From sequence record MK250027.1: a DNA stretch of 64,000 bases. The stretch is one strand, 5' to 3'. Shown here piece after piece: positions 5,074-48,063 of this stretch. Under the pieces are notes generated by a model, which made no database searches, was not told the DNA's origin, and saw nothing but the letters and a program-made list of their open reading frames with translations. Made by a program: the position numbers and the translations under genes. The stretch's first letter is position 1. Every line of letters begins with the position of its first letter.

Positions 5074-6312
5074 TTACTTATCCATTTTTGACCAATATAA
5101 ATCTTCATCAACTAAATCAATAAGTCCCGACTAATATACTTTCCAATCGGTTTTTGAATATACATGGTCTTTTACTTTATCATCGTCGTAATCTAATTTA
5201 TATTGTATTATAATAAAATTACCTTTTTCATCTTTTCCTTTCTCTATAACTTTATTACTTGTCATATAATTTGATGAATAGTCAGATAAAGACTTTGCAT
5301 TTAATTTATTATTTTCTTGTAAATGTGAAATTACTTTATTTCCAATAATATTTATAATTTCATGCATATCTTTTTTATTACTAAACTTATAATTAGGTAT
5401 ATTATAGTCTATTAAGAATTGTTTAAATAAATCCTCACCATATTTAAAACCATTATACTCCGATGGATTCATAATAAGTGGTTGCTGTTCCATTTTGAAT
5501 AATTTAAATCCTAATTTTTTAAGATATAACAAAAATAGTTCAAATGTTTTTAAATTTTCACAAATTAAAGAATATCCAAGTATTACATTTTTACATAATT
5601 TTGTCAACTTAATAGGGTTTTCATTATTATTTGTAACAAATATATTAATTTTACTATATAAATTTATATATTCTTCTTTAATAGGAATAACTTTATTTGG
5701 ATCAATAACTTCTTTCCTAGCATCTCCAATAATTATATTTTTTGTTTTATGATATATATCATCTTCTGCGTTCAATATAATATTTTTTATTTTATACCCA
5801 TTTTCTATATATGTGTTTATAAGATAAAACATTTGTAAAAATAATTCATTACCTATATAATCATATGGTATAAACTCCATATTATAATGTGGTTGTCCCA
5901 TATTAAATATAATATCTGTTATCACTTTATCATTAACATGTAATATACAATTTAAATCATATTTGTTTGTTCTACCAAATCCATAAATTTCAATTGTATC
6001 AATATCAATTGAATTATCATAGTCTTTAAATTTACAATTAATCTGAAATTTTTTTACATTATTAAAATATCTTATATAATACTTATTTTTACATGCTTCA
6101 TTAATATATATTAATCCTATATTGTAAAGATTTTCAGCCCTATCAAAATTCACAAAACTATCAGGATATTCAGTGATATTATATGGTAGTTTTTTAAGCT
6201 ATCTTATTTCATTATTATATAATTCCTATGATACTGTACGTTCTGGTGTATCTACAATATCGTCTATATCATCAAAAAGGGACTCAACTAATTTCTTTAT
6301 TAATTTATTCAT
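5074..6312 (-). CDS. Hypothetical protein (412 aa, 3 TAG) with N-terminal LVESLFDD motif
   Basis: Extends track ORF 5131-6153 through TAG at both ends. ATG at 6312 overlaps the upstream TGA (ATGA). TAA at 5074. Confidence 0.8.
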
Positions 6313-9300
6313 TTTGTATATTTTTGTTCTATTATTTTTATAATAAATTTAATATTATCATAAGCAGGATCCGTATTTACAATAACTTCTCGTGTTCTAT
6401 TTTCTTGAGTAGGCCAACTATAAGATGAATTATATGTTTGCTTTATATTAAATTTAAAAGTTAATCTGTCAAAACTACAATTTATACCATTCTTATTGCT
6501 TTCTGTAACACTAAAACTATTAAAATACTACCAATATACACCTACTGAATTATTTCCATTAAATGAAGAACACAAATAACTACTAAAATCATATGTACTT
6601 GTATCATTACTTCTTTCACTATATGATATATTAATTGTTTTTAATGTAATCGTATCATCATACTATTTATAACCTTCTATATAAAAACATGCACTATTTT
6701 TATCTGCATATGTTCTATTAAATACTGTTAACCCATTATCAGTACTTTTTTTATAACCATATAAATTTCTAGAATCTAATTGTCCACTTCCTGTTTTTAC
6801 ATTATATGTAAGTCTTGCTAACCATGTATATGAACTTTTTATATTTGCTTCCTATACAGTTAAATTATATGTTTTTGTCTATTCTTTATTTACTTCTGTA
6901 TCAGTTGTATTAAAAATATATTTTTCTGTGCTTCTATCTAATGTTATTGATGGGTTACTCCCTTTATTCTTAAATGTACGATATGTTACTTTTACACGTC
7001 CATTACATAACTGACTCCACATATGACCATATAAATCTATGTAAATATATTTACATTTGTTTTCTAATAATGTATTACTAATCTATGCTAAAATTTCTTT
7101 CATATTAATAAATATAGATTCCTATGAACCTGATCTATTATCTCCAGAAAAACCTAGTATATCTTCATATTCTGTATAATTGTTCGTTTGATGCCAATAT
7201 TCAGTTGTACTTGGATATAAAGTCTCAGAAAATCCCATTGTTGTATTATTTAATATATATGTTTTATTATGAGATGTTATATTCATTTTAATATTTTTAT
7301 TATTTGTAATATGTGTTATTGTATCCAAATCAGAACCAGTCAATTTATTTTTTTCTGATGGAATATGTGAACTACCAGCATTATTTAAAAATATATATTC
7401 AAATAATAAAAAATCAAATGAAGCTAATCCAATAGCAAACGCACTTGCTTGATTAATTAACATTATTTTATTGTCAACTGAACCTATATTATATTTTACC
7501 GTAAAATTAACACACCTCTCATAATCATAATCTGAGTCTTTTGGATTCTAACTAAATTTACATTTTAATTCTAATTTATCATCTTTTAATGATGTTTCTT
7601 CTGTTTTAAAATCAGCAAGATACTCATATGTCATATCACCATCATTATATTTTTCATATGTAACTTCATAATGTGACTAATTAGTATCAATATATGTACC
7701 ATTTTTTACTTTTGCATAATACTATAAATAAAAATAGCCTGAATCAGTAGCTTGCAATGCTAATTCTTCCATATCATCTTCAACTTTTGTTGAACCTCTC
7801 ATATAATATGCATGAACAAATAATTCAAACTCTCCTGCACCTTGTGATAATGTTTTATCTGCTTTTGCTTGACTATCATGAAATGTATATGTAAATGTAA
7901 ACGTTAATGTTCTATCTGTTGATGATATACCAATTTCAATATTATATATACATCTTGTTCCTGATATTATAGGTTCAGGTATATTTATACTTGAATCTGA
8001 GCATGTAAGTTCACCGTCTGATTTTTCATCACCATTAAGTTCACCATAACACTCAAGAGTTATAGTTTCCCCTGCATTGTTTATTTTTCCATCTACTGTA
8101 CCACTCGTTAAATTTATAACAGCATTAATATTTGATTTACCCTGATATATTATAAAAGTAGACAAATATTCTTTTGTAATATCACTATACTAATATTTTA
8201 CTGTTATTTTATATATTTTATCAGAAGTTGTACTATCATTTTCAGGAATAGTAACAGTTATTTTATAACACGGTTTATCTTCATCTTCATATTTTTCTTT
8301 ATCACTTCGTATTACACTTATATCATCACATGTTATATTATAATGTGTTAAATTGTCATCAAATGATTTATCTGGTCCACCTTTAAAATATAGTGTCTAT
8401 ATAATCTTCTTACCATTTTTTCTATAATCGACATAATCAGAACCGTTAAAATCGGGATTGTCTCTTATAATTACACTATACGTTGTGCCTGACTATTTAA
8501 GTGTGTCTGATGCATTTAACGACTCATTAATTGAAACTGTAGCAACTAAATTACGTTCATTCTCTGTGATATTATCTGTTACTGCATATGGATATGAATA
8601 TACATTATCATCACTTTTTGTTATTTTTGAAAAATCAATTGATATATTTTCATCGCCTAATGTTAATTTAAAATCATATTTTATTTTTGATAAATCTAAT
8701 TTATTCTTTTGTTCTTTATCATCAGCTTTTGTTAAATAATAATGTATATATATTATATCATTATTCTCATTCTTATTATTAGATATAGATGTTATTATTT
8801 TATTTCCATCCTTATTATAAAATCCAATATATAATGTATAATTAGTAGTATTATATGCAAATCTTTTAATATATAAATAGTTTGATTTTCCAGTAGTATT
8901 TACCGACTTACCATTATTATAATTGTAATATGTATAATTTCGTTTATACTATAAACTATAAGTAGTATTTTCTGTTTTTGACGTTATATCACTTAACTAA
9001 ACAGTAAATTCATAATAATTATCAGTATCATTAAATTCTGGGTTTTTTACAATAGTAATTTCATCATTTGATGATAAATAAATATCATCTTTTTTAATTG
9101 TTATATGATTTCCTTTAAGTTCACCGGTTTTTTTATCAAATGGCTATTTATAATCTAAATCTATATGATCATTACAATATAATCCTAAATATAATGTTAA
9201 TGTTTGTTCTGTAGGATCACAATATATATAATAATCATTTATCTTTTTATAGATATTACCATCTTTATGTCTAATTCCATATATTTTATTGTTATTCGGC

Positions 9301-12300: not shown

Positions 12301-12509
12301 TTATTATAATACTTATTTTCTGTTGTAAATTTATATCCAGTAATCCAATCAGGTTTATATATACATTCAATAGTAGATGTAATAGGTATATAGTTTTTTT
12401 CCAATACTGCATAATATTCCGTATCAGTACTGGTAAACTTATTTGCTGGTAATATAGGTAATGTAATTGTGTCTGATAATAATTTATTAAATTTATAATC
12501 GTTCATCAT
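6309..12509 (-). CDS. 2066-aa protein with tandem Ig-like/BACON-like beta repeats; probable virion surface or tail protein (about 35 TAG)
   Basis: Seven track fragments (12111, 11439, 11139, 10281, 9453, 7722, 7122) share one frame. Hand translation finds only TAG stops until TGA at 6309. The first repeat KPDW...NDN...R...VSQ has the W/N/R/Q pattern of BACON domains. Confidence 0.8.
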
Positions 12510-12531
12510 TTATATGCAATTAGTTTTTTAA

Positions 12532-14250: not shown

Positions 14251-14252
14251 TT

Positions 14253-14966
14253 TCAAATAATTAAGTTTTCAATATTTCCTAAATATTCAACATCATTTAA
14301 GTTAAATCTCTACTTTATGTTGTTATCAAACTTAACAATACATGTATTCATTTTTTCTTGTATAGAATGTAATGTACCAAATTTATCTTTAGATATAATA
14401 TAAACTTTATTTTCCTATAATTTATTTTGTTTAAATTTATTATAGTTTTCCTATGTTAATGGATATTTGGTTTTCTTATTCTACTTATTAGCGATAATTT
14501 TACCAAATACTCTTGGTACACCATCGAATGTTTTAATATTGTTAAAGTTAGCATAGAGATTTCCATGTATAATATATGGGAATGCAGTCCAATCAGGTAA
14601 GTTATTTCCTGTATAGTTACAAGAGCCATCTACCTCATCGAATTTAAATAACTGCATTCCCATTCTATTTAATCCTTTATTAGAAAGGTATAAATTATCA
14701 TGGACATCCACCAAAATACCATGACCTGTACATTTAATCTCATAGTTCTCTACATCAAGTTCATCTAAAATTCGTTCGACTCTTGGTTTTATTTCTGTTT
14801 CTTCATATTCTGATGATATGTTGTCTGACAGTGTTGTATCACTATCAAGCCCTAAAAAATCATCATCTTCATCATCAAAATCATCAAACAGAGATTCATT
14901 CAACTTTGAGATTTTTGTGTTGTTATATTTTCTTATTTTCTTATATTCTGGAACTGAAATAATCAT
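14253..14966 (-). CDS. Hypothetical protein (237 aa, 4 TAG) with LNESLFDD motif and short LRR-like repeats
   Basis: Track ORF 14481-14966 reads through TAG to TGA at 14253. Repeats VDGSCNYTGNNL..FP and IHGNLYANFNNI..P. Confidence 0.75.
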
Positions 14967-15006
14967 AATTAAAAAATAAATAATATTTTATATTATTTAT
15001 TTTTGT

Positions 15007-16812: not shown

Positions 16813-17100
16813 GAAGTAAATTTATCCAATATTAGTTTTATCCTTATAATTAGATATTTAACTTAATAACATATATGAATTTTATAATATATGTGAAGTT
16901 AACCTAAGAAAACTATATATGATATATAGAAAGATAATTATCTAAATCTTATCTTTTTAAAGATATGAATTAATCTAAATTTTATATACATAATTTATAA
17001 ACTAAATTCTTCCGTCGACTTAATCCATAAATATTCAATATATATAAAACATAAATATTCATTTATTATATTGGATATTATATTATTAGTTTATTAATTA

Positions 17101-17519: not shown

Positions 17520-17538
17520 TATTTATCACTTATAAATA
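17520..17538. promoter_or_regulatory. Back-to-back T4-like late promoter motifs (GATAAATA on minus 17520-17527; TATAAATA on plus 17531-17538)
   Basis: Lies between divergent genes. TATAAATA is the established T4 gp55 late promoter. The motif is common by chance in AT-rich DNA. Confidence 0.5.
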
Positions 17539-17568: not shown

Positions 17569-18609
17569 ATGAAAAAATTTAGCTTTGATAAATCTATATA
17601 TAAATGTTTAAATGAATCTTTATTTGATGATACAGATGATATATTATCCAATGGAAATACAAATAGCATATCAGACTTATATATTGATGATGATTATCTA
17701 TTGGAAAAGTTTAATGAATTATATAGTAGCCAAAAATTAGGTAAATATAATTTATTAGAATATCCTGTATTTAGTAAAATAGAAACATATAATATTAATG
17801 GAACTGATTATAAATTTATAACCGAAGCATCTAAAAATGGCGGATATACAACAGGGTATCCAACAGGACTAAAATATTCTGGACTTTTCTGTTATTTTAT
17901 AACAACATAGGAATTAATGGATTTCATTAATACTTATAATATTATAATACAATATCCAGTGGATGATGGTAAATATGATATTTATAATTATATAACATAT
18001 ATATTAAATGATATAACAATACCACATAATTTTTTAAATAATTTCCATTTATATGAACATGAAAACGTATAGCAAAAATCATATTCAATAGGATTAATAT
18101 TAAATAATTGTAAAGTTATAGGGCATGAATTAATTTCTTTATTATAGTCGGGTAATCATAATTATTTAAATATCAAATATGTATTATTAAATAAATTACA
18201 TATTAATTCATTAAATTTACCAAATATGACATATGGTTATCCATTAGAAATAACAAATTGTAATTAGTTAACAGATTTAAATATAAATTATAATATTAAT
18301 AATTATACAGAAGGTTCATTATTAATAAAAAGTTGCAAAAAATTATCAAATATAGAAATTAATGATAATTCAAAAATGGTACAGCTATTGAAATTAAAAA
18401 TAGATAAATGTCCGAATATAAATACAGATACATTAATATTACCAAATCATAATACTAAAATGTATAACGCATAGTTGTTTAATGATAAGACAAAATAGAG
18501 AAAAATAAAATTCAGAGGCGATATAGTAAAACAATTTTATACAGAATTACATCCTGATTATAAATATAAATATTATCAATCCGGTTATAAAAATATGTAC
18601 TGGTTATAA
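17569..18609 (+). CDS. Leucine-rich-repeat-like protein (346 aa, 6 TAG) with LNESLFDD N-terminal motif
   Basis: Track ORF 17569-17910 reads through TAG to TAA 18609. Repeats LEITNCNQLTDL, LLIKSCKKLSNI and LKIDKCPNI. Confidence 0.75.
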
Positions 18610-19044: not shown

Positions 19045-21252
19045 TTAATTTCCACCGAATAACTTATCTAATTCTTCTTGTGACATTGCATCTACTGCAT
19101 CATCACCATTTGTAGATGGTTCATCGTCTTTCTTATCATCTGATTTATCTTCATCAGAATCTGAATCACTATCATCTGAAGAATCACTGTCATCTGTTGA
19201 ATCAGAATCGTCATCAACAATTTGTCCACCAATCATATCTTCAAATTCTTCTTTAGTAATACCATATTCGTTATTCAAAACATCTGCAAGATCATTTACA
19301 TAATCTGTATTTGTTAAAACAACTTTAACTGGTTTATCATCACCATCTGCATTATCATCTGTTGAATCATCTGCATTTGCATCATCAGAATCTGAATCAC
19401 TGTCGTCTGAATCATCTGCATTTGCGTCATCAGAAGAATCATCATTATTATCTTCAAGTAATTTCTTGAACTTATTATAATGTAAAGACTCATTTGAAGC
19501 ATTATCATCTGTATCAGAAGAATCATCTGAATTTTCATCATCAGTAGATGTATCATCTGCATTGTCATCTGTTGACTCACTATCATCTTTAGAATCATCA
19601 GTTTCATCATCTTCATCTTCAAACTCAATAGCATCATCTGGAACACCAGCATCTACAAGAGATTGCTTAAGCTCATCTGCTGCTGCTTGATTTGCAACTG
19701 TAATTACAACACGTGATAACTCAACTTCTTCATCTGTATCTGGATTTTCATCTGTAGATGAATCATCAGCTTTATCCGTTGAACTATCATCTGCATTATC
19801 AGCATCATCACTTGCATCATCTGAACCTGTTGGATCTACTGGTAATGGTTCCAATGGATTATCTTGTGTTTCTTCATCCTCATTCAACTTAAGACCTTTA
19901 GCTTTAATTAATTTCTTATATGTTAAACGGTATGTAAGTTCTTCATCAAGAATATTCATTAACTTTTCTTTATTAAGAATTGAATCACGAAGTTCTCTCT
20001 TTGTTGATTTAGAAGCAGACTCATTCAAAGACTTATAAGATTTCATAAGTTTTGTATGCTGTGCTTTAACAGTATTTAACAATTCAAGAAGTTCTTTTGC
20101 TGTATATTCTGTAATATTCTTACCATTAATAGTTTTCTTCTCATAAAGATTCTTCTTACCAGACTTCATTGCTTTACGAATGAACTCAAACTTCTCTGAA
20201 CCAATTGATTCCTTTAATGCAAGAAGTTCTCTTCTTTTCTGTTGAAGTTTTGCGTTTTTATTAACAGGTTCACTCTTAGCTTTATTAATTGCACGATTAA
20301 TAATAGATTCATTAAGTGTTGTTTTCTTTGCAGATTTTACAATATCCTTTGTGGTAAGTCCATTCTTTCTCATCTTCAATGCTTCAGAAAGATTTACAAG
20401 ACGTTTACCATTTCTTCTCTTTCCTGGACAACATCCTTTCTTTTTCTCAAGAAGCTTCTTTCTTTTTAAACGACGATCATTCTTTGATTCATAGCACTCA
20501 AACTCTTCATCTTCCATGCATTCATCAAATTCATCATCTGAATCATTCAAAGAATCTTCATCTGCAAATTCTTCATCTGCATCTTCATATGTCTCATCAT
20601 AAAGATCATCATCATCATCAAGTTCACCTTCTGCATCCATATCTGCATATGCATCATCTCTTGCATCCAATGCATCTGGATCATTAGGATCTACCTCATC
20701 ATAATCTGGAATCATATCATCATAATCATCTTCGTCATCAAGATAGTCATCATCAATAGACTCATCCATATCTACATAATCATCACCATATTCATCCTTC
20801 ATATCATCAATAGCTGTATCTCTTGCATCATCATCTTCTGGAATATCAAGCCATTCACCTTCATCATCAAGGCCATAGTCTTCATCCATATCTTGATAAT
20901 CATCACCATACTCATCTTCCATATCTGCTTCAGCTGCAGCACGTGCATCATCATCAGACTCTACATCGTCAAGTTCATCATCTGCGTCGTCATATGTAAA
21001 ATAAGTATCAACATCATCAATATTATATTCGTCTTCAAAAATATCAATAATATCATCTTGTGTAAGTCCGTCAATTACCATATATACGGTATCTCCATCC
21101 TCTTCCTTTGATACTGTAGCGTCTGCATTCGTATCTTCAATATGTGTAGCCAAATCATCCATATTACCTTGAAGTTCAGGATAATCATGAACAAGCTATA
21201 CAACATCAATCTTTACAGGAAATGCATAACTTTCATTAAGTTTTCTTTTCAT
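19045..21252 (-). CDS. Acidic 735-aa protein with many L-x-E sites; candidate prohead scaffold/core protein
   Basis: Track ORF 19045-21162 extended through one TAG (codon 19) to ATG 21252 (MKRKLNESY). D/E-rich flanks surround a basic central block. The GATAAATA leader (21284-21291) is nearly identical to the sheath gene leader. Confidence 0.8.
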
Positions 21253-21948: not shown

Positions 21949-24513
21949 TTAAATACCACGTTTACCAAATTTAGAAGTATCAATACCAATTAAATTCTTT
22001 AATGATATACCTCCTAATTTCTGCATTTCTGCAAAAGTCTTTAATATAAACTTGACATTTTGATTAAATACAACAAAAACAACATCTTTTCTTATTTTTG
22101 ATGGAATTAATTTAAGTTGTTCCCAACCTGTATCTTCACCATCTGTAAATACAATTATTGTTGTATGTTTCTCTCCATTATCGTAATAATATGGTTTCTT
22201 AAGTTTTGTAACACTTATAGTATTACCAGGAATATCTGTACCACCAGAACCACCACGATCTCCAAGAAGTTCAAGACGTTTCTTTATAGGTGTCTTAATA
22301 TTCCACATTGCTACATTTTCAGGAAGAATACGGCCTGTTGTAAAATATGCTCTGGCAGAATTCAATACCTTACATGTTTTCTCCATTGTACAAATTTCCT
22401 TGAATATCTGATAGAATATTCCATTTCCATTACCATACATAGAACCTGAATTATCTATAAGATAAAATATATTAGCCGCATTGTTTTCTTCAAATGGAAC
22501 TTTCTTATATGGATTGAATCTATCATCACGCCATGATTGTGACATTGTTCTTTTCGAACGTTTCATTTGTGTTCCCGCTTCCATTGCAGCTGTGAAATGT
22601 TTTCTTAACTTTTGTTTCCAGTTAGCCAATGATTGCATATTCTTTAATTTATCTGCAATATCATTAAGTTTGTTTGCTAAATCAGGAGAAATATTTCTTA
22701 ACTGATCCATGTGTTCTTCATTATACTTTCTTGATAATTCTTTAGGATCACATGTTAATTCTTCAGCTGTATAAGGATCACCAGATTCTTTTGCAATTTC
22801 TGCCATTTGTTCTTGTGACAACATATCAGCGCCACCGAAGGTAGAAGACGTAGTAGTATCAAATTCTTTACCTTCCAATTGTTTCTGAACTTCATCTTCA
22901 TTAGGTCCCGCTTGCATATCTCTATCGATTTTATTTTTCATATCATCAATAGCTTTCTTGACATCCTTACGCGCTTGTTCACGTGCAGCTTTTTCTTCTG
23001 CAGACATTTGTCCAGAATTTCTACCGGATTTTGAATTGCCAGTTGAACCTTGATCAGACATATCACCATTCATTGATGAACCATCATTATCAGACGAACT
23101 ATTACCAGATTGAGAATTACCTCGTTCATTTCCTTGTTCTCCTGATTGATTTCCATTACCAGTTTGTGAATCATTTTCTGAATTATCTCCTTCTTGATCA
23201 TCACCTGAACCATTACCATTCTGATTATCATCTGAATCTTCATCACCGTTACCAGAACCTTTACCCATTGCTTTATCTAATTCTTTCTTTACTTCATCAT
23301 TATAAGCATCTTGATATTCACTAGATTTATTTGTATTATCAGGCATTTGATCCATACCATAATCAGACATTGTATCTGGATCAGCTGCACTTAAATCTGT
23401 ATCATCATAATTTGATGAACCTCCTTGTTGACTACCGTCGTCAGATTGCTGTTGTCCAGATTGACCTGACTGATTTCCAGAATCACTTTGACTTCCAGAC
23501 TGACTGGATTGTTCACTCTGACCTTGTTGTCCTGATTGTGATTGACTTCCAGATTGTCCTTGTTGACCATCTTGCTGTCCGGATTGTCCACCTTGTCCTT
23601 GTTGCTGTTGTGAACTACCACTACCTTGACCTTGTTGTCCTTGCTGTTGTTGATTATTAACAGGATTTTGATTAATAGGTTGATTTGGTGTAGAAACCTT
23701 ATTATAGAAATAAGCATCAAAAATTAATTGCCATGGTTCCATTCGGAATCTATCATCAAATATACCATCACATTCTGCAGTTGCACCTGCAAAATATTTA
23801 GGAATTTGTTTTTCAAGATCTCTATTAATCTCTGCATCCATGGCAATATTTGCCAATTGATGATTCTTTCCTCCTTGTGTTTCTGTTTTTCTTTCAGCTT
23901 GTTCTCTATGCCTATATATTTGATGATATGCCTCATGACAAATAACATATAATACTAAACGTGCCATAGTAATAATTCTATCATTAGACGACATGCGTTT
24001 ACCTTGTGCAAGCATTTCCTTTACTTGTCCTTTTCCTTTATATAAAAGTTGTTCAGCAAATATAGGATTAAACGCAATACGGACACCATCACTGGCCGCA
24101 GTATCAATATTAAATGTCCATAGAATAGGTTTATTAAATCGTCCAAGAATTGGTCCTAATTCCCTTGTACTTGCAGCTTGCGTCTTTGCCATTTCGCAAA
24201 ATTGAGCAATCTCTGCAGGAACTATTTCCTCTTCTGTTTGAACACCGGTTATTGCATCAGTTATCTTCACTTTTACAGGAACACGCATTTTAGCAACAGG
24301 TATTGCCATACCCATATCTGCCATTGTTTTCCCTTTATATAACTTTCGTATATCAATACTCTTCTTTTTCATGAGTCTTCCCCATAATCCTTGAAGTTCT
24401 CGTTGTTTTTCTTCAGCAGTCTTCAACTTAATACCCATTGTTTGTTTAACAGTATTATTTGAATATGCTTCATATACTCGAGTTTTATTAGTTTTTAACT
24501 TTACTTTTACCAT
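21949..24513 (-). CDS. Metallopeptidase-like (HExxH) plus VWA domain protein (DUF2201-type MoxR partner), 854 aa
   Basis: CHEAYH motif, long Q/G/S/D linker, MIDAS residues DNSGS...GGTD...FTDG. No TAG in the ORF. Confidence 0.85.
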   Translation of the reverse strand: MVKVKLKTNKTRVYEAYSNNTVKQTMGIKLKTAEEKQRELQGLWGRLMKKKSIDIRKLYKGKTMADMGMAIPVAKMRVPVKVKITDAITGVQTEEEIVPAEIAQFCEMAKTQAASTRELGPILGRFNKPILWTFNIDTAASDGVRIAFNPIFAEQLLYKGKGQVKEMLAQGKRMSSNDRIITMARLVLYVICHEAYHQIYRHREQAERKTETQGGKNHQLANIAMDAEINRDLEKQIPKYFAGATAECDGIFDDRFRMEPWQLIFDAYFYNKVSTPNQPINQNPVNNQQQQGQQGQGSGSSQQQQGQGGQSGQQDGQQGQSGSQSQSGQQGQSEQSSQSGSQSDSGNQSGQSGQQQSDDGSQQGGSSNYDDTDLSAADPDTMSDYGMDQMPDNTNKSSEYQDAYNDEVKKELDKAMGKGSGNGDEDSDDNQNGNGSGDDQEGDNSENDSQTGNGNQSGEQGNERGNSQSGNSSSDNDGSSMNGDMSDQGSTGNSKSGRNSGQMSAEEKAAREQARKDVKKAIDDMKNKIDRDMQAGPNEDEVQKQLEGKEFDTTTSSTFGGADMLSQEQMAEIAKESGDPYTAEELTCDPKELSRKYNEEHMDQLRNISPDLANKLNDIADKLKNMQSLANWKQKLRKHFTAAMEAGTQMKRSKRTMSQSWRDDRFNPYKKVPFEENNAANIFYLIDNSGSMYGNGNGIFYQIFKEICTMEKTCKVLNSARAYFTTGRILPENVAMWNIKTPIKKRLELLGDRGGSGGTDIPGNTISVTKLKKPYYYDNGEKHTTIIVFTDGEDTGWEQLKLIPSKIRKDVVFVVFNQNVKFILKTFAEMQKLGGISLKNLIGIDTSKFGKRGI

Positions 24514-24623: not shown

Positions 24624-27413
24624 TTATTTCTTTGCTCGTGATTTAGCGTTTGAACGAGTCTTATTAAATTCATAAGATTCAGATCTTGCCAAAATATTCA
24701 TCGCAGGTAAAATTGGAACTTTAGATTCTTCTACTTGATTTTCATGTGCAATAGATTTAAGATCAGAAGATTTCTATTGTCTAGCATTCTCTAACGCAAT
24801 TTTTGTCTTTCTAATAGCTACTGTATTAATGAATTCCTTACGAAGATCTGTATCAATATTATTAATACTATCAAACAATGTTGTATTCATATTATGAGCG
24901 ATACTACCAATTTCCGTTTGAATGCTAATCTTAGCAATCCATGATGCAAAATGTGCATAAAGTTGAGCAACACGAGAATTAACCAATGAATTAACCTTAT
25001 TACGTAATGTATCCATATCTGCTAATTCATTCTCATCAAATAACAAATTAATAGATTTACCATTAATATTAAATGAATATTCCTTGATAAGATTCTGTGC
25101 TTCAGCAGCAACATCAGAATCTGACATTGGTTTTGCTTTCTTTAATGCTTTCAAATCTGCTGCAACATCATCTTCAAGATTACCTGGATAAGATGCGAAT
25201 ACTTGTATTGGTAATTCCTTTGCAATACTAGAAATACACTTCCACTTAGAATATTCCGAAGTTGCATATTGATCAACAGATAATGGTTTTCTATCATCAT
25301 CATCTTGATATTCCTTAGGCATACTACCAGTTTCCCAAATAGTATCCATAACATCTGGTGTAAATACCTTAGCATATTCATTATATGTTTTCCATGCACT
25401 CATAACAGGACCGGTTGCTGTAGCACCATTTGTACCTGTATCATCACCAACCATATCTCTCATGTTATCAGTGAAATAATTCATGAAGATATTATAACGT
25501 CCACGAATACCTGTTGCAGTTCCAGCAGGATCTAAGTCATCAATACCACCATGTTCTTCTACCCAATAATTCCAATAATCATCATCAAGACTATTCAATG
25601 CATCTTGAAGAACATTAGGAAGAATACCACCATAATATTCCTTGTATGTATTACCTTCATCATCAGTCTTTTCTTCTACAGATTGATCAATTAATTTCTG
25701 ATAATATTCTTTACCTGAAATACCATCAGGATTTTCATCAAATAATTCAATTAATTCATTCTTATAGAATGGACCTACTGTATTAGCCCATGTACGAGGA
25801 GTAACCATTCTCTTAGTACGAAGAATAACTTCCTAATTAAGAACATCCTGTATAGATGATAAAGAATCTTCATTTTCATGTGCCCTCTTATCTGCCTCTG
25901 GATTCTCAAGCATATCATCATAACCACCGTTTGCAATAGTAGAATACCATACATAATCAGGAGATGCTTCAATGAAGTCTACAATAAATGGAGGTACATT
26001 TGCCTCATGTGTCAATGGATCAACTGAACGTGCCCAAGTAATCCATTCGTCCTTAGAAGGAACATATGTATAATGGATAAAACGGTTTGTCTGCGCAGCA
26101 GTTGGGAAATATCTCTTATCTTCTGAATCTGCTTCACCTTCATCAATAGATCTATTAGAAGCAAGAACAAATCCCCATTTAGATGCAACAACATAATTAT
26201 CACCAAACTTATGATCATTTACGATACCCATGATAATATTCTGAACATTAGGTTCAACACGTGAATATTCATCCATAAATACAACGCCACCTTCAAATGG
26301 ATGTCCGTTAGATGCAGTGATTTCACCATCATCATCAGTTGCAAGGAACTTACATGTATTACAGAAATAATCGCGACGTTTCTTTTCCTCTGGATCAGAA
26401 GTATTAAGATATACTGGAAGCCAGTTCTTAGGAGTATCAGTAAATCCTTCTCTCTTATATTTCTTAGGAACACTTGTTCTATCTCTCTTCTAACCAAGTT
26501 CTACACCATAATCAATTTCACGTGTAGAGTCACGAGGTAATGTCCAGTTTTCAATAGTATAGCCAGCAAGCATAATAACTTCAAGATTCAAGTTAATTGC
26601 CTTATATTTAGCATTAGCCATATCTTTGATAGTTTGCTTAATAATTGCAGTTTTACCAATACCTGGAGCACCCCAAATAAGGAATGGTACAACATCTGAG
26701 TGTCCGCCAAGAGGCCCAGAAATTTGATTCTTAATATTAGTCTTAAGCTTAGCGATTAATTGTTTTGAATTAACAGCGACGCCGAAATGACTAAACCCTT
26801 TACTGTCCTTTACTGCATCATATGAATAAACTGCTTCATTCAAAGCCTTATGTAATTTAGATTCTTTATAATATGTTTCATTTACATACTTAATAGATTC
26901 TGTGATAGTCTCATCTGTTGTACCAGCACGCTTAATAACACGACTCCAATAATTAACAATATTTTTCTTATCATTAGCAATACCTTCTGCGAATGCTTGA
27001 TCAATAGATAACCCACCAACTCCAGCGGTAGATTTAAGAGAAGCAGATGGCGCGAAATAAACACCTTTAGGTAATTGATGTTTCTATGCCATGATAGCAA
27101 GATTACCGACATTATTAAGAGACCAATTAATAACAGCATCTGTTGTCTCATCAATAAGTGCAATAAATCCCTTTACTTTATCTGTAATATATGAAGCTAC
27201 TTTCTTTCCGTATTCCTTAATCTTATCTAAGAAACCTTCATTAATTAAAATCTTATTTAATGGAATATTGTTCTCTGTGTAATTATCATCAAAACGCATT
27301 GAACAAGTATCGTTAGACTCGTTAATCGATAAAAGAATACCGTTAATCTTATACTATGTACCATTTACACAATGTACAAGAGTAGCAGGTATATTTAACT
27401 TAGTTTTTACCAT
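24624..27413 (-). CDS. MoxR-family AAA+ ATPase (929 aa, 5 TAG)
   Basis: Four track fragments in one frame are joined by TAG (27354, 27084, 26490, 25833, 24774). Walker A GAPGIGKT, Walker B VFMDEYSR, ASNR and TPRTW motifs. TAA at 24624. Confidence 0.88.
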
Positions 27414-32116: not shown

Positions 32117-32593
32117 GTAAATAATATTATCAATAGTTGAGATGGTATCTTTCATATACTTACAGAAATTATCCAATAAATCAACTGATTCTTTTTCTGC
32201 TGATAGTTGAGATTCAATCTGTAAATTAATAGCACTTTCATTCGTATATCTAATTCCAGATGAACCAGATTTTAAAGCTAAATAAATTCCTGATGCTTTA
32301 GACTTATAATCTCTCGTTTGCTTTTGTAATATCTTTGCTGTTCCATAAAATAAGTCTATTGCTTCTTGTCTCTTTAAATAAACTTCATTCATCAAACCAT
32401 CAATAGATTTCAAATCTTTCATTCGTTCATTTAAATTCTTAATAATATCTGTCCACTTATCTTGAAGATTACTCAATGAATTTTCCAATGAATTTTGTTG
32501 TGAATTAACATTATTATTCTGATTAGTTTGTTGAACTTGATTATTATCTATAGAATTATTATTTTCTGTTACTACTTCATTTTCTTTATCCAT
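32063..32593 (-). CDS. UvsY-like recombination mediator protein (176 aa)
   Basis: Helical protein whose C-terminus (KYMKDTISTIDNIIYGINNKIKVFEMIHG) resembles the T4 UvsY-family C-terminal pattern. Recognition is from memory only. Confidence 0.5.
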   Translation of the reverse strand: MDKENEVVTENNNSIDNNQVQQTNQNNNVNSQQNSLENSLSNLQDKWTDIIKNLNERMKDLKSIDGLMNEVYLKRQEAIDLFYGTAKILQKQTRDYKSKASGIYLALKSGSSGIRYTNESAINLQIESQLSAEKESVDLLDNFCKYMKDTISTIDNIIYGINNKIKVFEMIHGLKF

Positions 32594-32944: not shown

Positions 32945-33227
32945 NNNNNNNNNNNNNNNNNNNNNNNNNNNNNNNNNNNNNNNNNNNNNNNNNNNNNNNN
33001 NNNNNNNNNNNNNNNNNNNNNNNNNNNNNNNNNNNNNNNNNNNNNNNNNNNNNNNNNNNNNNNNNNNNNNNNNNNNNNNNNNNNNNNNNNNNNNNNNNNN
33101 NNNNNNNNNNNNNNNNNNNNNNNNNNNNNNNNNNNNNNNNNNNNNNNNNNNNNNNNNNNNNNNNNNNNNNNNNNNNNNNNNNNNNNNNNNNNNNNNNNNN
33201 NNNNNNNNNNNNNNNNNNNNNNNNNNN
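32945..33227. other. Assembly gap (283 N)
   Basis: Run of N in the sequence. Confidence 1.
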
Positions 33228-37536: not shown

Positions 37537-37625
37537 CATAATAAATAAATTAATTATTATAAAGGATATAGCATTTATTTGTTATATCCTTTAATTATAA
37601 TTAAAAATGTTAAACAAATAATTAT

Positions 37626-37823
37626 ATGGATAATATAATATTCATAGTAGTATATGTTTTAATAGGATTAATAACATATGGATATTTTTTATATATAACA
37701 AAAGATAATGAAAATATAGATAGAAAATATAAGATAAAAATGTTTATTATTTCATTAATTGCGAGTCCATTGATGATCCTGTTTGAATTATTTCTTTTAC
37801 TATTAAATAGATATGATTACTAA
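37626..37823 (+). CDS. Small two-TM membrane protein (65 aa)
   Basis: Two hydrophobic stretches, TAA stop, between gp47 and gp46. Confidence 0.6.
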   Translation: MDNIIFIVVYVLIGLITYGYFLYITKDNENIDRKYKIKMFIISLIASPLMILFELFLLLLNRYDY

Positions 37824-37826
37824 AAT

Positions 37827-39598: not shown

Positions 39599-40024
39599 TC
39601 ATCTATCATATTTTCCACCAAAAATTTTTGACATATATTCACATAAACTTGCATATAAATCTGCATTTGGTGATTTTACTTGTTTATATGTAAAGAAATA
39701 ATATTCATTTTTTTCTACTAATATATTATTTAATTTTCTTAAAAAATTAATATTAGTATCAGGTGAAACTGTTATTACCCATGCGGTAAATTCATCAAAG
39801 TAATATACTCCTTTTACACGATTTCTTAAAAATTCCTCATATTCTTCAAATGTATTATTTGAAATTAAATATATATAATCGTCTTTACTTGTTTCTTTAC
39901 ATAAATATGTTGCTTCGTTCTCATCATCTTCATCAACATAATCTTCATTAAGTTTTCCTTTTACTGTTTTAGAAATACTTTTCATTATTGACTCATAAAG
40001 TCTTTTCTTTTGTATTTTATCCAT
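39599..40024 (-). CDS. Hypothetical protein (141 aa) with LYESIMKSIS...LNE leader
   Basis: Track ORF with TGA stop. AATAAATA upstream at 40045-40052. Confidence 0.75.
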   Translation of the reverse strand: MDKIQKKRLYESIMKSISKTVKGKLNEDYVDEDDENEATYLCKETSKDDYIYLISNNTFEEYEEFLRNRVKGVYYFDEFTAWVITVSPDTNINFLRKLNNILVEKNEYYFFTYKQVKSPNADLYASLCEYMSKIFGGKYDR

Positions 40025-40319
40025 AATAAAATTTATATTTTTATTATTTATTATTGAAATATAAATTTAAAAATATTACTTACTATACAATATATTATTT
40101 TACATAACTATATTTTATTTTTCTTCTTTTAATTTCCAACACCAACAACCATGATCATTTGCATATGTATGTCCGAATAAACCTGATTTACATTCATTCC
40201 AATTTTCATCAGGGTTATAGAAAATACAATTCTTACAATAACGCTGGATATAATTATTCTCTTCCATTTATTAAAAATTTATTTTTATTACTATATTTAT
40301 TTTTTTATTCCAAATATTA

Positions 40320-44242: not shown

Positions 44243-44252
44243 CTTAATTTAA

Positions 44253-45907: not shown

Positions 45908-46593
45908 TTGATATATTATCTACAAATGATAATGATGTTATTTTAAATAAAGCAAAAGAGTATATATTTAAAGTATTTCATAATAATGATATTAATCCAC
46001 ATAATTTATTTTGTGGGTGGTTTTTATTTACAAAGACATGTAAACATTATTTTGTTGATTATACTTGGAAAGAACCAATACAAAATAAAATATTAAAATT
46101 TTTTAATATTAAAATTAATGAGCATTCATATATTGATGACGAATTAACAAAAATGTTTTGTATATATGTATATTCTCTTAAGTATAAAAGAAAAATAACA
46201 GATTATGATAGATTGACCCCAATTGCTGAGACTCTTTCTAATCTGTTGATTAGAACAGAAGAGACTTACTATGGAATAAGAAAATTACTTAGAGATTTAT
46301 GTTTAGGTTTAATATGTAAACCAAAAGGAATAACAACATATAATGTTATCGAACATTATGAAGATATGATTACTTATAAATTAAATAATGTTGCATATCA
46401 TTGTTATAGTTGTAAATTAGATGTAAAAGTAGATAATGAACAAAATAAATTAATAGTGAATATTAACTTTATTAAAACAGATACATATTCTAGATATATG
46501 AATTTATTTGAACAAGTGGAACCATTATTTAATTTATTGCAAGAAGATTTAGCATATTTTAATACATATGGATATTTCTATGACATGAAATAA
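45883..46593 (+). CDS. Hypothetical protein (236 aa)
   Basis: Track ORF with TAA stop. Confidence 0.75.
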   Translation: MLEESNSIIDILSTNDNDVILNKAKEYIFKVFHNNDINPHNLFCGWFLFTKTCKHYFVDYTWKEPIQNKILKFFNIKINEHSYIDDELTKMFCIYVYSLKYKRKITDYDRLTPIAETLSNLLIRTEETYYGIRKLLRDLCLGLICKPKGITTYNVIEHYEDMITYKLNNVAYHCYSCKLDVKVDNEQNKLIVNINFIKTDTYSRYMNLFEQVEPLFNLLQEDLAYFNTYGYFYDMK

Positions 46594-46626
46594 ATAATGT
46601 AAATATCAAATTGTTTATTTGAAATT

Positions 46627-48063
46627 ATGATAATTAAATCACTATATGAATCATTGGTAAATTGTTTGAATGAAGCACGTGTTTAGAGAACTATAGATAA
46701 GAAACTTTGGTTAAGTATAGCATCTACATGTTCACGAAATAAATCAACTGAAGCTGAAAATATTAAACCACGATCAACATAGACGAAAGAATAGTTGTTA
46801 CCGAGATATGTAGCTGCTCTTCTTATAATGAAGAAGCAATGTCCAGAAAATGAATAGGATATTGATGATATAAAGACATTTAAATTAGTCGGTAAACGTT
46901 TACTATAGTTAGGTTGCACAATAGATGAAATAAAGCAAGAGTATATTAATAACGGAGGTAAATTAGTTACTAATACAATTAATGTAAATTCTTAGAAAAC
47001 TACATAGGTTAATCAAAAACTTAATCAAGAAGTAAAGAAAGAAGATTAGGTTAAAGTTGATAAAACAAAAGAAGTAAAGAATTAGAAACCAAAGGTATAG
47101 AAACAATTACCGCCAGGTATTAAATCTTATGATGAAGTATATGATTTTGTAAAACGTTCATATAATGATTTATATGAAATCTGCAGTGAAATATATGATA
47201 TTCTTGATATGACATATTTTACATTAAAGAAATCTTTTTATAAGATAGAAACTCCTAAATATAAATTGTATTTCAGAGATGTTACAACAGATGAGAATCA
47301 GAAACTTTATTACAATGATAAACATTGTGTTTATATAACATGGATAAAAATTGTTAAAACTAAAGTAGTTGAAGGTACATTTTGTATATTAACTAATAAT
47401 ATGACAATTAATGATGACCCTATTGGTAATACTATATAGTTAGATGATAATACAGTAATTACTAAACAATAGTTATATGAAATATGTTTAACTATATTAG
47501 CAAAATTAAGATATGCTACATAGAGTAATTATAATAATCCATTATTACCTAAAATAAAAGAGAAAACAACTTCATTCGGTATATTTGGAAATAAATCACG
47601 TGATTTTAATTCTATAATAGATAAAGGTGAAATTGAAAAGATATTACCATTTGTAATTAAGAAATATAATACCATGAAAAAATGTAATGATATTCTTGAA
47701 TTATTTTTATATAAAGCAAGGATGGGTAATAGAAATAGTGGTAAAGTATTAGAATTAGATGAACCTATATATACAGGTAAATTCTTTAATTCATAGGAAA
47801 CTTTTGATTTGATAGGATATGGCTTTAAACCAGCCGCATAGTTTATTATTCAATTTAAGTATGATGATAAATATACGACACAAATAATATATGGATATGA
47901 AGCTAGAGAATATGGACCTCCAGCAAATATTGCATCGTATTATACATCTAACAAAGATTTTTCAGCATATAGGGTAGATATGAAAGAATTACAAAAAGCT
48001 TTATGGTATACTATAGCTGTTTTATTATATTATAAAAATAATTATAGTAATGTAATTAAATAA
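46627..48063 (+). CDS. Hypothetical protein (478 aa, about 15 TAG) with LYES...LNEA leader
   Basis: Continuous frame from ATG 46627 to TAA 48063 with TAG = Gln; includes track fragment 47209-47439. AATAAATA at 46589-46596. Confidence 0.8.

What the first reader, a model, noticed from the sequence alone, without database searches (positions are those of the whole stretch)
5074..48063. Shared N-terminal basic leader ending in L-x-E-S/A on many late proteins: candidate capsid-targeting and prohead-protease signal
Seen: MNKLIKKLVE-SLFDD (6312), ...KISKLNE-SLFDD (14966), ...IYKCLNE-SLFDD (17569), MKRKLNE-SY (21252), ...KTRVYE-AY (24513), ...LSINE-S and KILINE-G (27413), KKRLYE-SIMK...KLNE-D (40024), IKSLYE-SLV..LNE-AR (46627) and RNIIQE-SF (3541). 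Three otherwise unrelated proteins share E-S-L-F-D-D-x-D-D. Nearly all have an (A/G/T)ATAAATA motif 25-45 nt upstream (3569, 14994, 17531, 21284, 24542, 27442, 40045, 46589). Established: T4 gp21 cleaves after Glu in I/L-x-E, and T4 internal proteins carry a cleaved N-terminal capsid-targeting peptide. Inference: this phage packages a large, diverse set of cargo proteins (LRR proteins, ATPase, VWA) through a portable leader, possibly for injection into the host.
Basis: partly seen in the sequence, partly recalled or inferred. Interest (0 to 1): 0.7.

Follow-up and report, generated by a model that had tools for sequence, protein, structure and literature searches.

The report
Lak megaphage head-protein cleavage leaders
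A giant gut phage (Prevotella Lak megaphage) tags dozens of otherwise unrelated late proteins with short N-terminal leaders that end in the cut site of a T4-type head protease, so it probably loads a large and varied protein cargo into its capsid the way phage T4 loads its few internal proteins.

Summary

The window is a TAG=Gln recoded Prevotella Lak-B-type megaphage.
- In three related genomes, [LIVM]-x-E-[SAG] at residues 3-30 occurs in 27-38% of genes with an ATAAATA late promoter. It occurs in 7-9% of other genes, which is about the chance level.
- Control motifs show no such enrichment (Asp, Gln or Lys instead of Glu; reversed order; non-hydrophobic P3).
- The phage encodes a T4 gp21-family prohead protease, a gp23-family capsid protein with an invariant L-N-E near its N-terminus, and a gp55-like late sigma factor.

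The "leader" is really two portable modules.
- Class A: MNKxIKKLxE|SLFDDxDD in the window's lineage.
- Class B: MxKxxKKxLYE|SIMKSxSKxVKxKLNE|.

In the Lak-A/B genomes examined, neither module's carriers share anything detectable beyond it. Class A protein bodies specifically avoid the cut motif, which argues that they meet the protease inside the prohead.

Cleavage, packaging and injection remain unproven. I read this as a new, greatly expanded variant of the T4 capsid-targeting/prohead-protease system. The assembly gap does not touch any part of the finding.

The parts
6259..6312 (-). Class A leader of gene 5074-6312 (412 aa): MNKLIKKLVE|SLFDDIDD, putative cut after Glu10. No promoter of its own; it is the last gene of operon 14966->5074.
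   Evidence: shares only residues 1-18/38 with other class A proteins
14871..14966 (-). Class A leader of gene 14253-14966 (237 aa): ...KISKLNE|SLFDDFDD, putative cut after Glu24.
   Evidence: the Lak-A orthologue keeps TLNE|SMFDDFDD
14994..15000 (-). ATAAATA late-promoter motif, 34 nt upstream of start 14966
17569..17640 (+). Class A leader of gene 17569-18609 (346 aa): ...IYKCLNE|SLFDDTDD, putative cut after Glu16.
   Evidence: the Lak-A orthologue has a diverged pre-cut part (KKLYE|SLFDDTDG)
17532..17538 (+). ATAAATA late-promoter motif, 37 nt upstream of start 17569
39944..40024 (-). Class B leader of gene 39599-40024 (141 aa): MDKIQKKRLYE|SIMKSISKTVKGKLNE|D. Two putative cuts (Glu11, Glu27) flank a basic amphipathic stretch.
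   Evidence: The DNA pattern occurs in 29 stretches of IMG/VR; every long contig among them is a Lak-like megaphage contig. In most of the 25 distinct genes (21 have it at residues 6-27) Leu sits at residue 9.
40045..40051 (-). ATAAATA late-promoter motif, 27 nt upstream of start 40024
46627..46674 (+). Short class-B-like leader of gene 46627-48063 (478 aa): MIIKSLYE|SLVNCLNE|ARVQRTIDKKLW. The following ~120-140 residues are shared with two paralogues outside the window.
46590..46596 (+). ATAAATA late-promoter motif, 37 nt upstream of start 46627
3485..3541 (-). N-terminus of the large (1682 aa in G001) late protein that runs off the window: ...VRNIIQE|SF, Glu19. The site is conserved as IITE|S in the 673-kb standard-code relative.
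3569..3575 (-). ATAAATA late-promoter motif, 34 nt upstream of start 3541 (an overlapping second copy lies at 3573-3579)
19045..21252 (-). Hyper-acidic 735-aa protein with a basic central segment: MKRKLNE|SY at Glu7, plus five internal [LIVM]xE[SA] sites (164, 290, 315, 348, 411). A prohead core/scaffold-like candidate. Promoter at 21284-21290.
   Evidence: weak similarity to the C-terminal extension of the protease protein
21949..24513 (-). 854-aa protein: ...KTRVYE|AY (Glu15), no other site in 854 residues (2.3 expected). Promoter at 24542-24548. Only a sub-threshold DUF2201_N hit.
24624..27413 (-). 929-aa MoxR-like AAA ATPase with LSINE|S (Glu32) and ILINE|G (Glu59). Promoter at 27442-27448. 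The second site is conserved (IYINE|GF) in the 673-kb relative.
32945..33227 (.). Assembly gap; not part of any leader gene. Flanks are collinear and the sequence is continuous.

Best explanation
The window belongs to a Lak-B-type Prevotella megaphage whose head is built on the T4 plan. It has a gp23-family capsid protein, a gp21-family (Peptidase S77) prohead protease, and gp55-type late transcription from ATAAATA promoters.

The protease most likely cuts after Glu in (L/I/V/M)-x-E followed by a small residue. That site closes short N-terminal leaders on many late proteins. Two leader modules are portable.
- Class A: a 10-residue basic piece, MNKxIKKLxE, joined to an acidic tag SLFDDxDD.
- Class B: a 27-residue piece, MxKxxKKxLYE-SIMKSxSKxVKxKLNE, with a cut site at each end.

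Inferred mechanism: the leader docks the protein to the assembling prohead core, the shell closes around it, and the protease then trims the leader and degrades the scaffold-like proteins. The cargo stays in the head with the DNA and may be ejected into the host.

Shown here: the motif statistics, its portability, its conservation, the encoded machinery, and the avoidance of the site in cargo bodies. Inferred only: cleavage, packaging and ejection.
For: 1. Identity. The capsid protein is 99.8% identical to Prevotella phage Lak-B1 to B9.

2. Machinery.
- Peptidase_S77 hits at E=3e-16 and 1e-14, and phrog_207 'head maturation protease' at 2e-30.
- The T4 gp21 His85 and Ser140 columns are invariant across T4, Lak-B, Lak-A, the 673-kb relative and PTm1. 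T4's I-T-E187|S188 aligns with Lak Y-L-N-E|S at the end of the protease domain.
- The capsid protein matches Pfam Gp23 at 3e-32.
- A gp55-like sigma factor matches phrog_234 at 9e-11.

3. Capsid protein site. L62-N63-E64 is invariant or nearly so in 12 capsid proteins that are 63-95% identical to the first sequence, and the residues just downstream vary. Its position is like T4 gp23 FLTE|A.

4. Enrichment confined to late genes.
- G001: 19/52 against 13/179 (OR 7.4, p=1e-6).
- Lak-A, complete 554 kb: 31/115 against 35/457 (p=1.2e-7).
- Standard-code 673-kb relative: 45/118 against 48/528 (p=2.4e-13).
- The D/Q/K, reversed and non-hydrophobic-P3 controls are flat.

5. Selection by the downstream tag alone. 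P3 is Leu in 17/20 and P1 is Glu in 17/20, while P2 is free (L, N, M, Y, V, I). In the relative, P1 is Glu in 35/40. This alternating pattern is the one described for T4 gp21, L/I-X-E (PMC9026906).

6. Highest site density. The protein with the most sites in all three genomes is the protease protein itself (9, 8 and 11 sites against about 1.5 expected). In the Lak-A/B genomes it is followed by scaffold-like and acidic core-like proteins.

7. Portability. The 13 class A bodies in Lak-A and the 7 in G001 fall into 13 and 7 unrelated clusters.

8. Selection acts on the protein. The ESLFDD codons vary synonymously: Ser as TCT, TCA, TCG, TCC or AGT; Glu as GAA or GAG; Leu as TTA, CTG or CTT.

9. 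Site avoidance. Class A bodies are depleted in [LIVM]xE[SAG]: 25 against 47 expected (z=-3.3), and 1 against 8.1 (z=-2.5). No control motif is depleted, and other gene classes have ratios of 1.0-1.2.

10. Gene position. Leader genes sit among head-core genes, next to the scaffold-like gene and the protease gene.
Against: - No proteomic or biochemical datum exists for this uncultivated phage. Nothing shows that any site is cut or that any of these proteins is in the virion.
- In class A the most conserved segment is downstream of the putative cut. In the 673-kb relative, 5 of 40 members lack the L-x-E altogether, so the acidic tag can work without cleavage.
- Some pre-cut pieces are only 4-5 residues long (MKINE|), too short to be a targeting signal themselves.
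- Class A bodies carry binding-type repeats (DUF285 LRR, WG repeats), which would also suit external adhesins.
- 35 of the 40 class A proteins in the relative are paralogues, so their site depletion is not 35 independent events.
- About 7-9% of all genes carry the motif by chance. One example is the tail sheath of the relative, where it is not conserved.
- The protease gene lies outside the window, in the near-identical record.
- The N-terminal region of the capsid protein could not be aligned to T4 gp23 by sequence.
Confidence: 0.7

Rival explanations
1. The class A module is an N-terminal anchor that fixes external fibre- or adhesin-like proteins (LRR, WG-repeat) to the outside of the capsid or to the baseplate. 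On this reading L-x-E is simply part of the docking motif and is never cut.
For: - Class A bodies have binding-repeat domains: DUF285 at 1.6e-61 and 1.3e-48, WG_beta_rep at up to 2.8e-23.
- The conserved part lies after the putative cut, and 5 of 40 members in the relative lack L-x-E.
- The tag changes in concert within a lineage, as expected for docking to one partner.
- From my own memory, not checked here: a cultured distant relative, Tenacibaculum phage PTm1, was described as having head-fibre-like appendages.
Against: - The bodies specifically avoid [LIVM]xE[SAG] and none of the control motifs. Proteins that never meet the protease have no reason to do so.
- P1 and P3 are fixed while P2 is free, which is a protease-type pattern.
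- A class A gene lies between the scaffold-like gene and the protease gene.
- The same cut motif closes class B leaders and sits at the invariant capsid-protein site.
Confidence: 0.12
2. The leaders are recognised by some other machine, for example the phage's own ClpX-type unfoldase (window 28945-30201), a chaperone, or the ejection apparatus. The Glu site would then be incidental to that recognition and not a capsid-targeting signal.
For: - The phage encodes a ClpX homologue: AAA_2 at 1e-31 and the ClpX zinc finger at 7e-11.
- The leaders are N-terminal, basic and then hydrophobic.
- The class A acidic tag would remain on the mature protein, so it could act later, for example during ejection.
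Against: - Nothing links ClpX to these genes.
- This reading does not explain the specificity for Glu plus a small P1' residue, the invariant capsid-protein L-N-E, the very high site density in the protease/scaffold proteins, or the site avoidance.
Confidence: 0.08
3. The shared N-termini are leftovers of a repeated DNA cassette (late promoter plus the first codons) spread by duplication or recombination, with no function of their own.
For: - Promoter and leader travel together.
- Many leader genes lie in tandem arrays in the 673-kb relative.
- Closely related T-even phages are known to shuffle promoter-bounded cassettes (my own knowledge).
Against: - Codons of the conserved residues differ synonymously, including TCN against AGT for Ser.
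- The 5'UTRs between promoter and ATG are not alike.
- The modules persist between phages whose capsid proteins are only 72% identical and whose G+C content is 25% against 41%.
- Several leader genes have no promoter of their own.
Confidence: 0.04
4. The motif is a by-product of composition or of selection on the 5' coding region of highly expressed genes in an A+T-rich genome.
For: K, N, I, E, S and L are all very common residues. By chance alone 6-9% of proteins carry the motif in their first 30 residues.
Against: - The controls with Lys, Asp or Gln at P1, the reversed motif, and non-hydrophobic P3 are not enriched.
- The effect is equally strong in the 41% G+C relative.
- Composition cannot explain 10- to 27-residue shared modules.
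Confidence: 0.03

Closest known systems
Phage T4 capsid targeting sequence (CTS) on internal proteins IPI-III and Alt, removed by prohead protease gp21 (L/I-X-E)
   Same: - Short N-terminal leader (10-19 residues in T4; 10 or 27 here) that ends in hydrophobic-x-Glu, carried by otherwise unrelated proteins (PMC9026906).
- A gp21-family protease and a gp23-family capsid protein are encoded.
- The protease carries its own sites at both ends of its domain.
- Scaffold-like proteins carry many sites.
- Genes are driven by a TATAAATA-type late promoter.
   Different: - No evident sequence likeness to the T4 head-protein leaders fetched here. The T4 IP leaders themselves were not fetched.
- Two leader families, not one.
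- Dozens of carriers per genome: 13 class A + 7 class B in Lak-A, and about 40 + 11 in the 673-kb relative.
- Carriers are large (up to 750 aa) and built of repeat domains.
- In class A a conserved acidic tag lies after the cut and would stay on the mature protein.
- A small P1' residue appears to be part of the site.
Head propeptides and ejection/inner-body proteins of giant phages phiKZ, 201phi2-1 and SPN3US (protease gp175/gp245; S/A-X-E or A-X-E)
   Same: - Giant myophage heads with many processed proteins.
- Cleavage after Glu by a diverged gp21 homologue.
- Paralogous families of packaged, ejected proteins.
- Preference for Ser at P1' in SPN3US (PMC10052503, PMC9026906).
   Different: - P3 here is Leu/Ile/Val/Met as in T4, not Ala/Ser.
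- The leaders here are short and modular. The propeptides of those phages are mostly 111-254 residues long.
- The Lak protease matches S77 directly, above Pfam's threshold.
T4 late transcription (gp55 sigma, TATAAATA promoter)
   Same: - ATAAATA at a fixed distance (the motif starts about 30-39 nt from the ATG) upstream of 52 of 231 genes, against 1.4 expected per 10-nt bin.
- It is also the top upstream 7-mer in a relative found de novo.
- A gp55-like protein is encoded.
   Different: - The first T of the T4 octamer is not required (A, G or T occur).
- The host is a Bacteroidota member.
- The cultured distant relative PTm1 uses ATACATA instead.
Cargo-loading peptides of other protein shells (encapsulin C-terminal targeting peptides; MuF-fused phage toxins)
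   Same: A short portable tag directs diverse cargo into a capsid-like shell.
   Different: Those tags are C-terminal peptides or whole-domain fusions, and no maturation protease removes them. The likeness is one of concept only; nothing was tested here.

Membership tests
T4-type prohead maturation system (Peptidase S77 / gp21) | A gp21-family serine protease is encoded by the phage | tested here: met
   Pfam PF03420 at E=3.4e-16 and 9.6e-15, above the curated cut-off; phrog_207 at 2e-30. The gene lies outside the window, in record G001, which is 98.8-99.2% identical to the window over the shared part.
T4-type prohead maturation system (Peptidase S77 / gp21) | Catalytic His and Ser conserved (His85 and Ser140 in T4 gp21; the residue numbers come from my own knowledge of the literature) | tested here: met
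   In a MAFFT alignment of T4 gp21 with the Lak-B, Lak-A, 673-kb-relative and PTm1 proteases, H85 and S140 are invariant columns.
T4-type prohead maturation system (Peptidase S77 / gp21) | gp23-family major capsid protein with an N-terminal piece that ends in L/I-x-E | tested here: met
   Pfam Gp23 at 3.1e-32. L62 is nearly invariant and N63 and E64 are invariant in 12 sequences. Equivalence to T4 E65|A66 rests on position only, because the sequence alignment of the N-terminal part failed.
T4-type prohead maturation system (Peptidase S77 / gp21) | Substrates are actually cleaved after Glu | not testable with these tools
   Needs proteomics or an enzyme assay. Indirect support: enrichment, the P1/P3 pattern and site avoidance.
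T4 capsid targeting sequence (CTS) | Short N-terminal peptide ending in the protease site, shared by otherwise unrelated proteins | tested here: met
   - Class A: cut after residue 10 in 10 of 20 members.
- Class B: Leu at residue 9 in most of the 25 distinct genes; 21 have it at residues 6-27.
- The bodies are unrelated in Lak-A/B.
T4 capsid targeting sequence (CTS) | Sequence relatedness to the T4 IP leader | not tested
   The T4 IP genes were not fetched. The T4 head-protein leaders that were fetched (gp21, gp22, gp24, gp67) share only the L/I-x-E ending with the Lak leaders.
T4 capsid targeting sequence (CTS) | The leader alone is sufficient to load a foreign protein into the head | not testable with these tools
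   Needs leader-reporter fusions in a prohead assembly system.
T4-type late promoter / gp55 | TATAAATA-like element at a fixed distance upstream of late genes, and a gp55 homologue | tested here: met
   - ATAAATA: 40 occurrences against 1.4 expected at 30-39 nt.
- Association with TAG-containing genes: OR 7.7, p=1.5e-9.
- Top de novo 7-mer in the relative: 120 genes against 5.5 expected.
- phrog_234 'late sigma transcription factor' at 9.1e-11 in Lak-A.
- The gp33 and gp45 partners were not looked for.

The most novel reading that the evidence does not exclude
Lak-type megaphages give a substantial share of their genome (on the order of a tenth in the 673-kb relative, where 40 class A genes encode about 22,000 residues) to a leader-tagged arsenal of fast-diversifying repeat-domain binding proteins. 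These are loaded into the head, trimmed by the prohead protease, and injected with the DNA as host-takeover or anti-defence effectors. The acidic tag that stays on the mature N-terminus (SLFDDxDD / SLLDxVxxDEVxD) would be a second signal that acts after cleavage, for example for ordered exit through the portal and tail. No such signal is known in T4.
Probability: 0.3. Interest if true: 0.8.

Novelty: new variant of a known kind. Interest (0 to 1): 0.62.

Why it matters
Lak megaphages are among the largest known phages. They are common in human and animal guts, they are uncultivated, and most of their genes have no assigned function.

A leader that can be recognised from sequence alone would give a provisional role (packaged in the head, perhaps injected) to dozens of orphan genes per genome. 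It would define the specificity of the Lak protease. It would also show that the T4 trick of a portable capsid-targeting leader has been scaled up from about four cargo proteins to tens.

It yields simple predictions that existing metaproteomes can test, namely the neo-N-termini. It also offers a candidate tag for loading foreign proteins into very large capsids.

Tried and rejected
- Own assembly. The window's own assembly is not held. I used the near-identical record G001 and two complete relatives.
- Complex prediction. Protease domain (residues 22-178) with a class B leader (residues 1-45): no verdict, score 0.02. This is evidence neither for nor against binding.
- Capsid protein against solved structures. 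Searches by sequence and by profile found nothing. The profile comparison with T4 gp23 aligned only the C-terminal part, so the match between the Lak L-N-E64 site and T4 E65|A66 rests on position alone.
- Exact ESLFDD pattern. It is absent from five more distant relatives, which led to the finding that the tag differs by lineage (SLLDxVxxDEVxD).
- Cultured distant relative PTm1. It has a different promoter word (ATACATA), only weak motif enrichment (7/34 against 17/250, p=0.015) and no class A or B leaders. It is therefore not a ready experimental stand-in.
- Protein atlas. I did not send them to any other outside tool afterwards, so the folds of the in-window class A bodies remain unknown.
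- Pfam and PHROGs. They give nothing for most leader-bearing proteins in the window.
- Motif hits rejected as chance. The baseplate-hub protein 33264-34034 (VVE|S) and the relative's tail sheath (IDE|S) are not conserved in orthologues.

Full report
**What the window is**

The window is 25% G+C, and under the standard code many long frames are broken only by TAG. Reading TAG as a residue joins them; for example, 6309-12509(-) becomes 2066 aa with 35 TAG codons. The choice of Gln is shown by the genomes themselves. At 773 in-frame TAG positions aligned to orthologues in a standard-code relative, Gln is the commonest partner, at 20.8% against 3.3% background.

The capsid protein of the near-identical record is 99.8% identical to Prevotella phage Lak-B1 to B9 and 94.5% identical to Lak-A1. 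The window also holds these genes:
- a tail sheath (51043-54804);
- a gp5/VgrG-type hub (33264-34034);
- ClpX (28945-30201);
- SbcCD (36418-39503);
- a TnpB (30921-32054);
- an M15 peptidase (48103-48558).

**The assembly gap**

The window's own assembly is not held. A 249-kb virus record, G001, matches window 1-32944 at 98.8% and window 33228-64000 at 99.2%. The match is collinear, and 282 bp separate the two blocks against 283 N in the window. The two sides of the gap are therefore continuous.

The gap lies between the divergent genes 32063-32593(-) and 33264-34034(+), and no gene of the finding crosses it. I masked the corresponding stretch in G001 and in the Lak-A relative in every script and did not read it.

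**The observation**

All nine quoted N-termini are present, and all eight promoter positions are correct.

The residues involved are common, so chance must be counted. In G001 (231 called genes), [LIVM]xE[SAG] at residues 3-30 occurs at 2.4 times its internal rate (p=5e-6). Motifs with Asp, Gln or Lys at P1, the reversed motif, and a non-hydrophobic P3 are not enriched.

ATAAATA starts 30-39 nt before 40 start codons, against 1.4 expected.
- The 52 genes with this promoter are strongly enriched in TAG-containing genes (OR 7.7, p=1.5e-9).
- They hold nearly all of the excess motif: 19/52 against 13/179 (OR 7.4, p=1e-6).
- The 7% in the other genes is about what chance gives.

**Replication in relatives**

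The capsid protein retrieved 17 loci from IMG/VR, on contigs of up to 673 kb. I fetched two complete relatives.
- G008 (553,716 bp) is Lak-A-like, about 80-85% identical to the window in DNA, and recoded. It gives 31/115 against 35/457 (p=1.2e-7).
- G002 (673,114 bp, terminal repeats) has 40.7% G+C, uses the standard code, and has a capsid protein 72% identical to the window phage's.
  - A de novo count of upstream 7-mers puts ATAAATA first, with 120 genes against 5.5 expected.
  - The motif is in 45/118 promoter genes against 48/528 others (p=2.4e-13), at 6.9 times the internal rate (p=3e-28). All controls are again flat.

The effect therefore does not depend on A+T richness or on recoding.

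**The machinery**

G001 encodes a 581-aa protein whose residues 47-153 match Peptidase_S77, the family of the T4 prohead protease gp21, above the curated threshold. It also matches phrog_207 'head maturation protease'.
- Aligned with T4 gp21, taken from the T4 record, the columns of His85 and Ser140 are invariant. I recall these as the catalytic residues (my own knowledge).
- T4's I-T-E187|S188 aligns with Lak Y-L-N-E|S at the end of the protease domain.
- T4's N-terminal L-I-E9 has a Lak counterpart, T-L-N-E21|S. The review PMC9026906 records both the LIE-9 site and C-terminal processing for gp21.

The capsid protein (667 aa) matches Pfam Gp23 at 3e-32. In 12 capsid proteins that are 63-95% identical to the first sequence, L62 is nearly invariant and N63 and E64 are invariant, while the residues just downstream vary. 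An earlier [LIV]xE|[SA]W site is nearly invariant. By position the L-N-E resembles T4 gp23 F-L-T-E65|A, although the N-terminal parts could not be aligned by sequence.

A gp55-like late sigma factor is encoded in the Lak-A genome (phrog_234, 9e-11). This fits the T4-like promoter word.

**Anatomy of the leaders**

There is not one leader. There are two modules, plus ordinary maturation sites.

Class A, in the window's lineage, reads M-N-K-x-I-K-(K/R)-L-x-E | S-L-F-D-D-x-D-D.
- When members are picked only by the downstream F-D-D tag, P3 is Leu in 17/20 and P1 is Glu in 17/20. P2 is free (L, N, M, Y, V, I). The cut falls after residue 10 in half of them.
- In G002 the tag is S-L-L-D-x-V-x-x-D-E-V-x-D. 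Forty proteins carry it, 35 with Glu at P1 and 35 with L/I/V/M at P3.
- Each tag version is confined to its own lineage in IMG/VR. The tag has therefore changed in concert across many genes, as expected if all of them dock to one partner.

Class B reads M-x-K-x-x-K-(K/R)-x-L-Y-E | S-I-M-(K/R)-x-(V/I)-(S/A)-K-x-V-K-x-(K/R)-L-N-E |. It is almost the same in Lak-B, Lak-A and G002.
- A 40-bit DNA pattern for it finds 29 stretches in IMG/VR. Every long contig among them is a Lak-like megaphage contig; a few short contigs could not be classified.
- Among the 25 distinct genes, 21 have the Leu at residues 6-27, most of them exactly at residue 9. Nineteen have ATAAATA upstream.
- Shorter or looser class-B-like leaders head the 46627-48063 family, a scaffold-like coiled-coil protein and a neighbour of the protease gene.

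After removal of the leader, the 13 class A proteins of Lak-A and the 7 of G001 fall into 13 and 7 unrelated clusters. In G002, 35 of the 40 are one WG-repeat paralogue family. Two class A bodies in Lak-A/B are DUF285 leucine-rich-repeat proteins.

The codons of E-S-L-F-D-D differ synonymously between copies, including TCN against AGT for Ser. Selection therefore acts on the peptide, not on a DNA cassette.

**Two further tests bearing on the mechanism**

First, site density. In each of the three genomes, the protein with the highest whole-length density of the motif is the protease protein itself (9, 8 and 11 sites against about 1.5 expected). In the Lak-A/B genomes it is followed by the scaffold-like protein, a 108-aa neighbour, and the hyper-acidic 735-aa protein of the window (19045-21252). 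This is the T4 pattern, in which the core and scaffold proteins are cut to pieces (PMC9026906).

Second, site avoidance. The bodies of class A proteins avoid the motif: 25 against 47 expected in G002 (z=-3.3), and 1 against 8.1 in Lak-A (z=-2.5).
- Motifs with Asp, Lys or Asn at P1, the reversed motif, a non-hydrophobic P3 and a non-small P1' are not depleted.
- All other gene classes have ratios of 1.0-1.2.
- Avoidance of a protease's site makes sense only for proteins that meet the protease, that is, inside the prohead. It also suggests that a small P1' residue is part of the site.
- Caveat: the G002 proteins are mostly paralogues, so that result is not many independent events. The Lak-A set is small but its members are unrelated.

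**Most likely mechanism (confidence about 0.7)**

Late genes are transcribed from ATAAATA promoters by a gp55-type factor. Leader-bearing proteins join the assembling prohead core through the leader. The gp21-family protease then cuts after Glu in (L/I/V/M)-x-E-(S/A/G).
- It removes the 10-residue class A piece, leaving the acidic tag in place.
- It removes the 27-residue class B piece, cut at both ends.
- It trims the capsid protein and itself.
- It fragments the scaffold-like and acidic core proteins.

The cargo stays in the head. The statistics, portability, conservation, machinery and site avoidance are shown. Cleavage, packaging and ejection are inferred from the T4 and giant-phage precedents (PMC9026906, PMC10052503).

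**Rivals**

- External fibre or adhesin anchor for class A (about 0.12). It fits the repeat domains, the fact that the conserved tag lies after the cut, and the five G002 members without L-x-E. It does not explain the site avoidance or the P1/P3 pattern.
- Recognition by another machine, such as the phage ClpX (about 0.08). Nothing supports it directly.
- A spreading DNA cassette (about 0.04) and a composition effect (about 0.03). The synonymous codon variation and the control motifs speak against these.

**Individual cases in the window**

- Well supported:
  - the three class A leaders (6312, 14966, 17569);
  - the class B leader (40024);
  - the 46627 leader;
  - the 3541 protein, whose site is conserved as IITE|S in G002;
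  - the acidic protein at 21252.
- Less sure:
  - 24513 (RVYE|A), which is conserved only in the close Lak-A relative;
  - the first ATPase site, LSINE|S.
- The ATPase's second site, ILINE|G, is kept as IYINE|GF in G002 at 37% identity.
- 'VWA' for 21949-24513 was not confirmed.

**Comparison with what is known**

The system works like the T4 CTS/gp21 system and passes the membership tests that can be run on sequence. It differs in four ways:
- the leader sequences themselves;
- two modules instead of one;
- scale, with tens of carriers per genome, many of them large repeat proteins, against about four in T4;
- the retained acidic tag of class A.

The giant phages phiKZ and SPN3US also cut after Glu, but with Ala/Ser at P3 and mostly long propeptides. 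The one Lak paper I searched for the relevant terms (N-terminal, propeptide, cleavage, promoter) contained none of them, and a phage G paper had no relevant mention either. I therefore rate this as a new variant of a known kind.

Noticed in passing
window 30921-32054 (-): A TnpB/IS605 OrfB-type gene (OrfB_IS605 at 1e-25, Cas12f1-like TNB at 3e-25) with 12 in-frame TAG codons, so this mobile-element nuclease is written in the phage's recoded code. Four related copies (73-85% DNA identity) lie scattered in the Lak-A genome.
   Followed up: partly
window 37827-39503 (+) and genome-wide: TAG codons are not confined to late-promoter genes. SbcC has 17 TAG and no ATAAATA promoter, and 50 of 179 genes without the promoter in G001 contain TAG.
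   Followed up: partly
window 28945-30201 (-): Phage-encoded ClpX homologue with the ClpX zinc finger. By its N-terminal sequence, gene 56787-57263 looks like SmpB (my own reading; not run against a library).
   Followed up: no
window 16846-17084: An intergenic stretch of about 240 bp has a second copy (87% identical) elsewhere in the genome (G001 6696-6937). Its nature is unknown, and it has no Rfam or tRNA match.
   Followed up: no
window 63291-63382 and 63574-63649 (+): Two tRNA genes: Trp(CCA), unusually long at 92 nt, and Ile(AAT).
   Followed up: no
window 58318-59208 (+): A protein with two nucleoside 2-deoxyribosyltransferase-like domains (5e-42), possibly tied to nucleotide or DNA-base metabolism.
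   Followed up: no
L032-L065 (G002, 673,114 bp): A complete relative (capsid protein 72% identical) has 40.7% G+C and uses the standard code, yet keeps the ATAAATA promoter and both leader modules. Recoding and the A+T drift are therefore recent within this clade. Its 40 class A genes, mostly WG-repeat paralogues in tandem arrays, encode about 22,000 residues.
   Followed up: partly
window 5074-14966 (-): A four-gene late operon starts and ends with class A genes (14253-14966 and 5074-6312). Between them lie two large orphan proteins of 574 aa and 2066 aa (13 and 35 TAG) with no family match.
   Followed up: no
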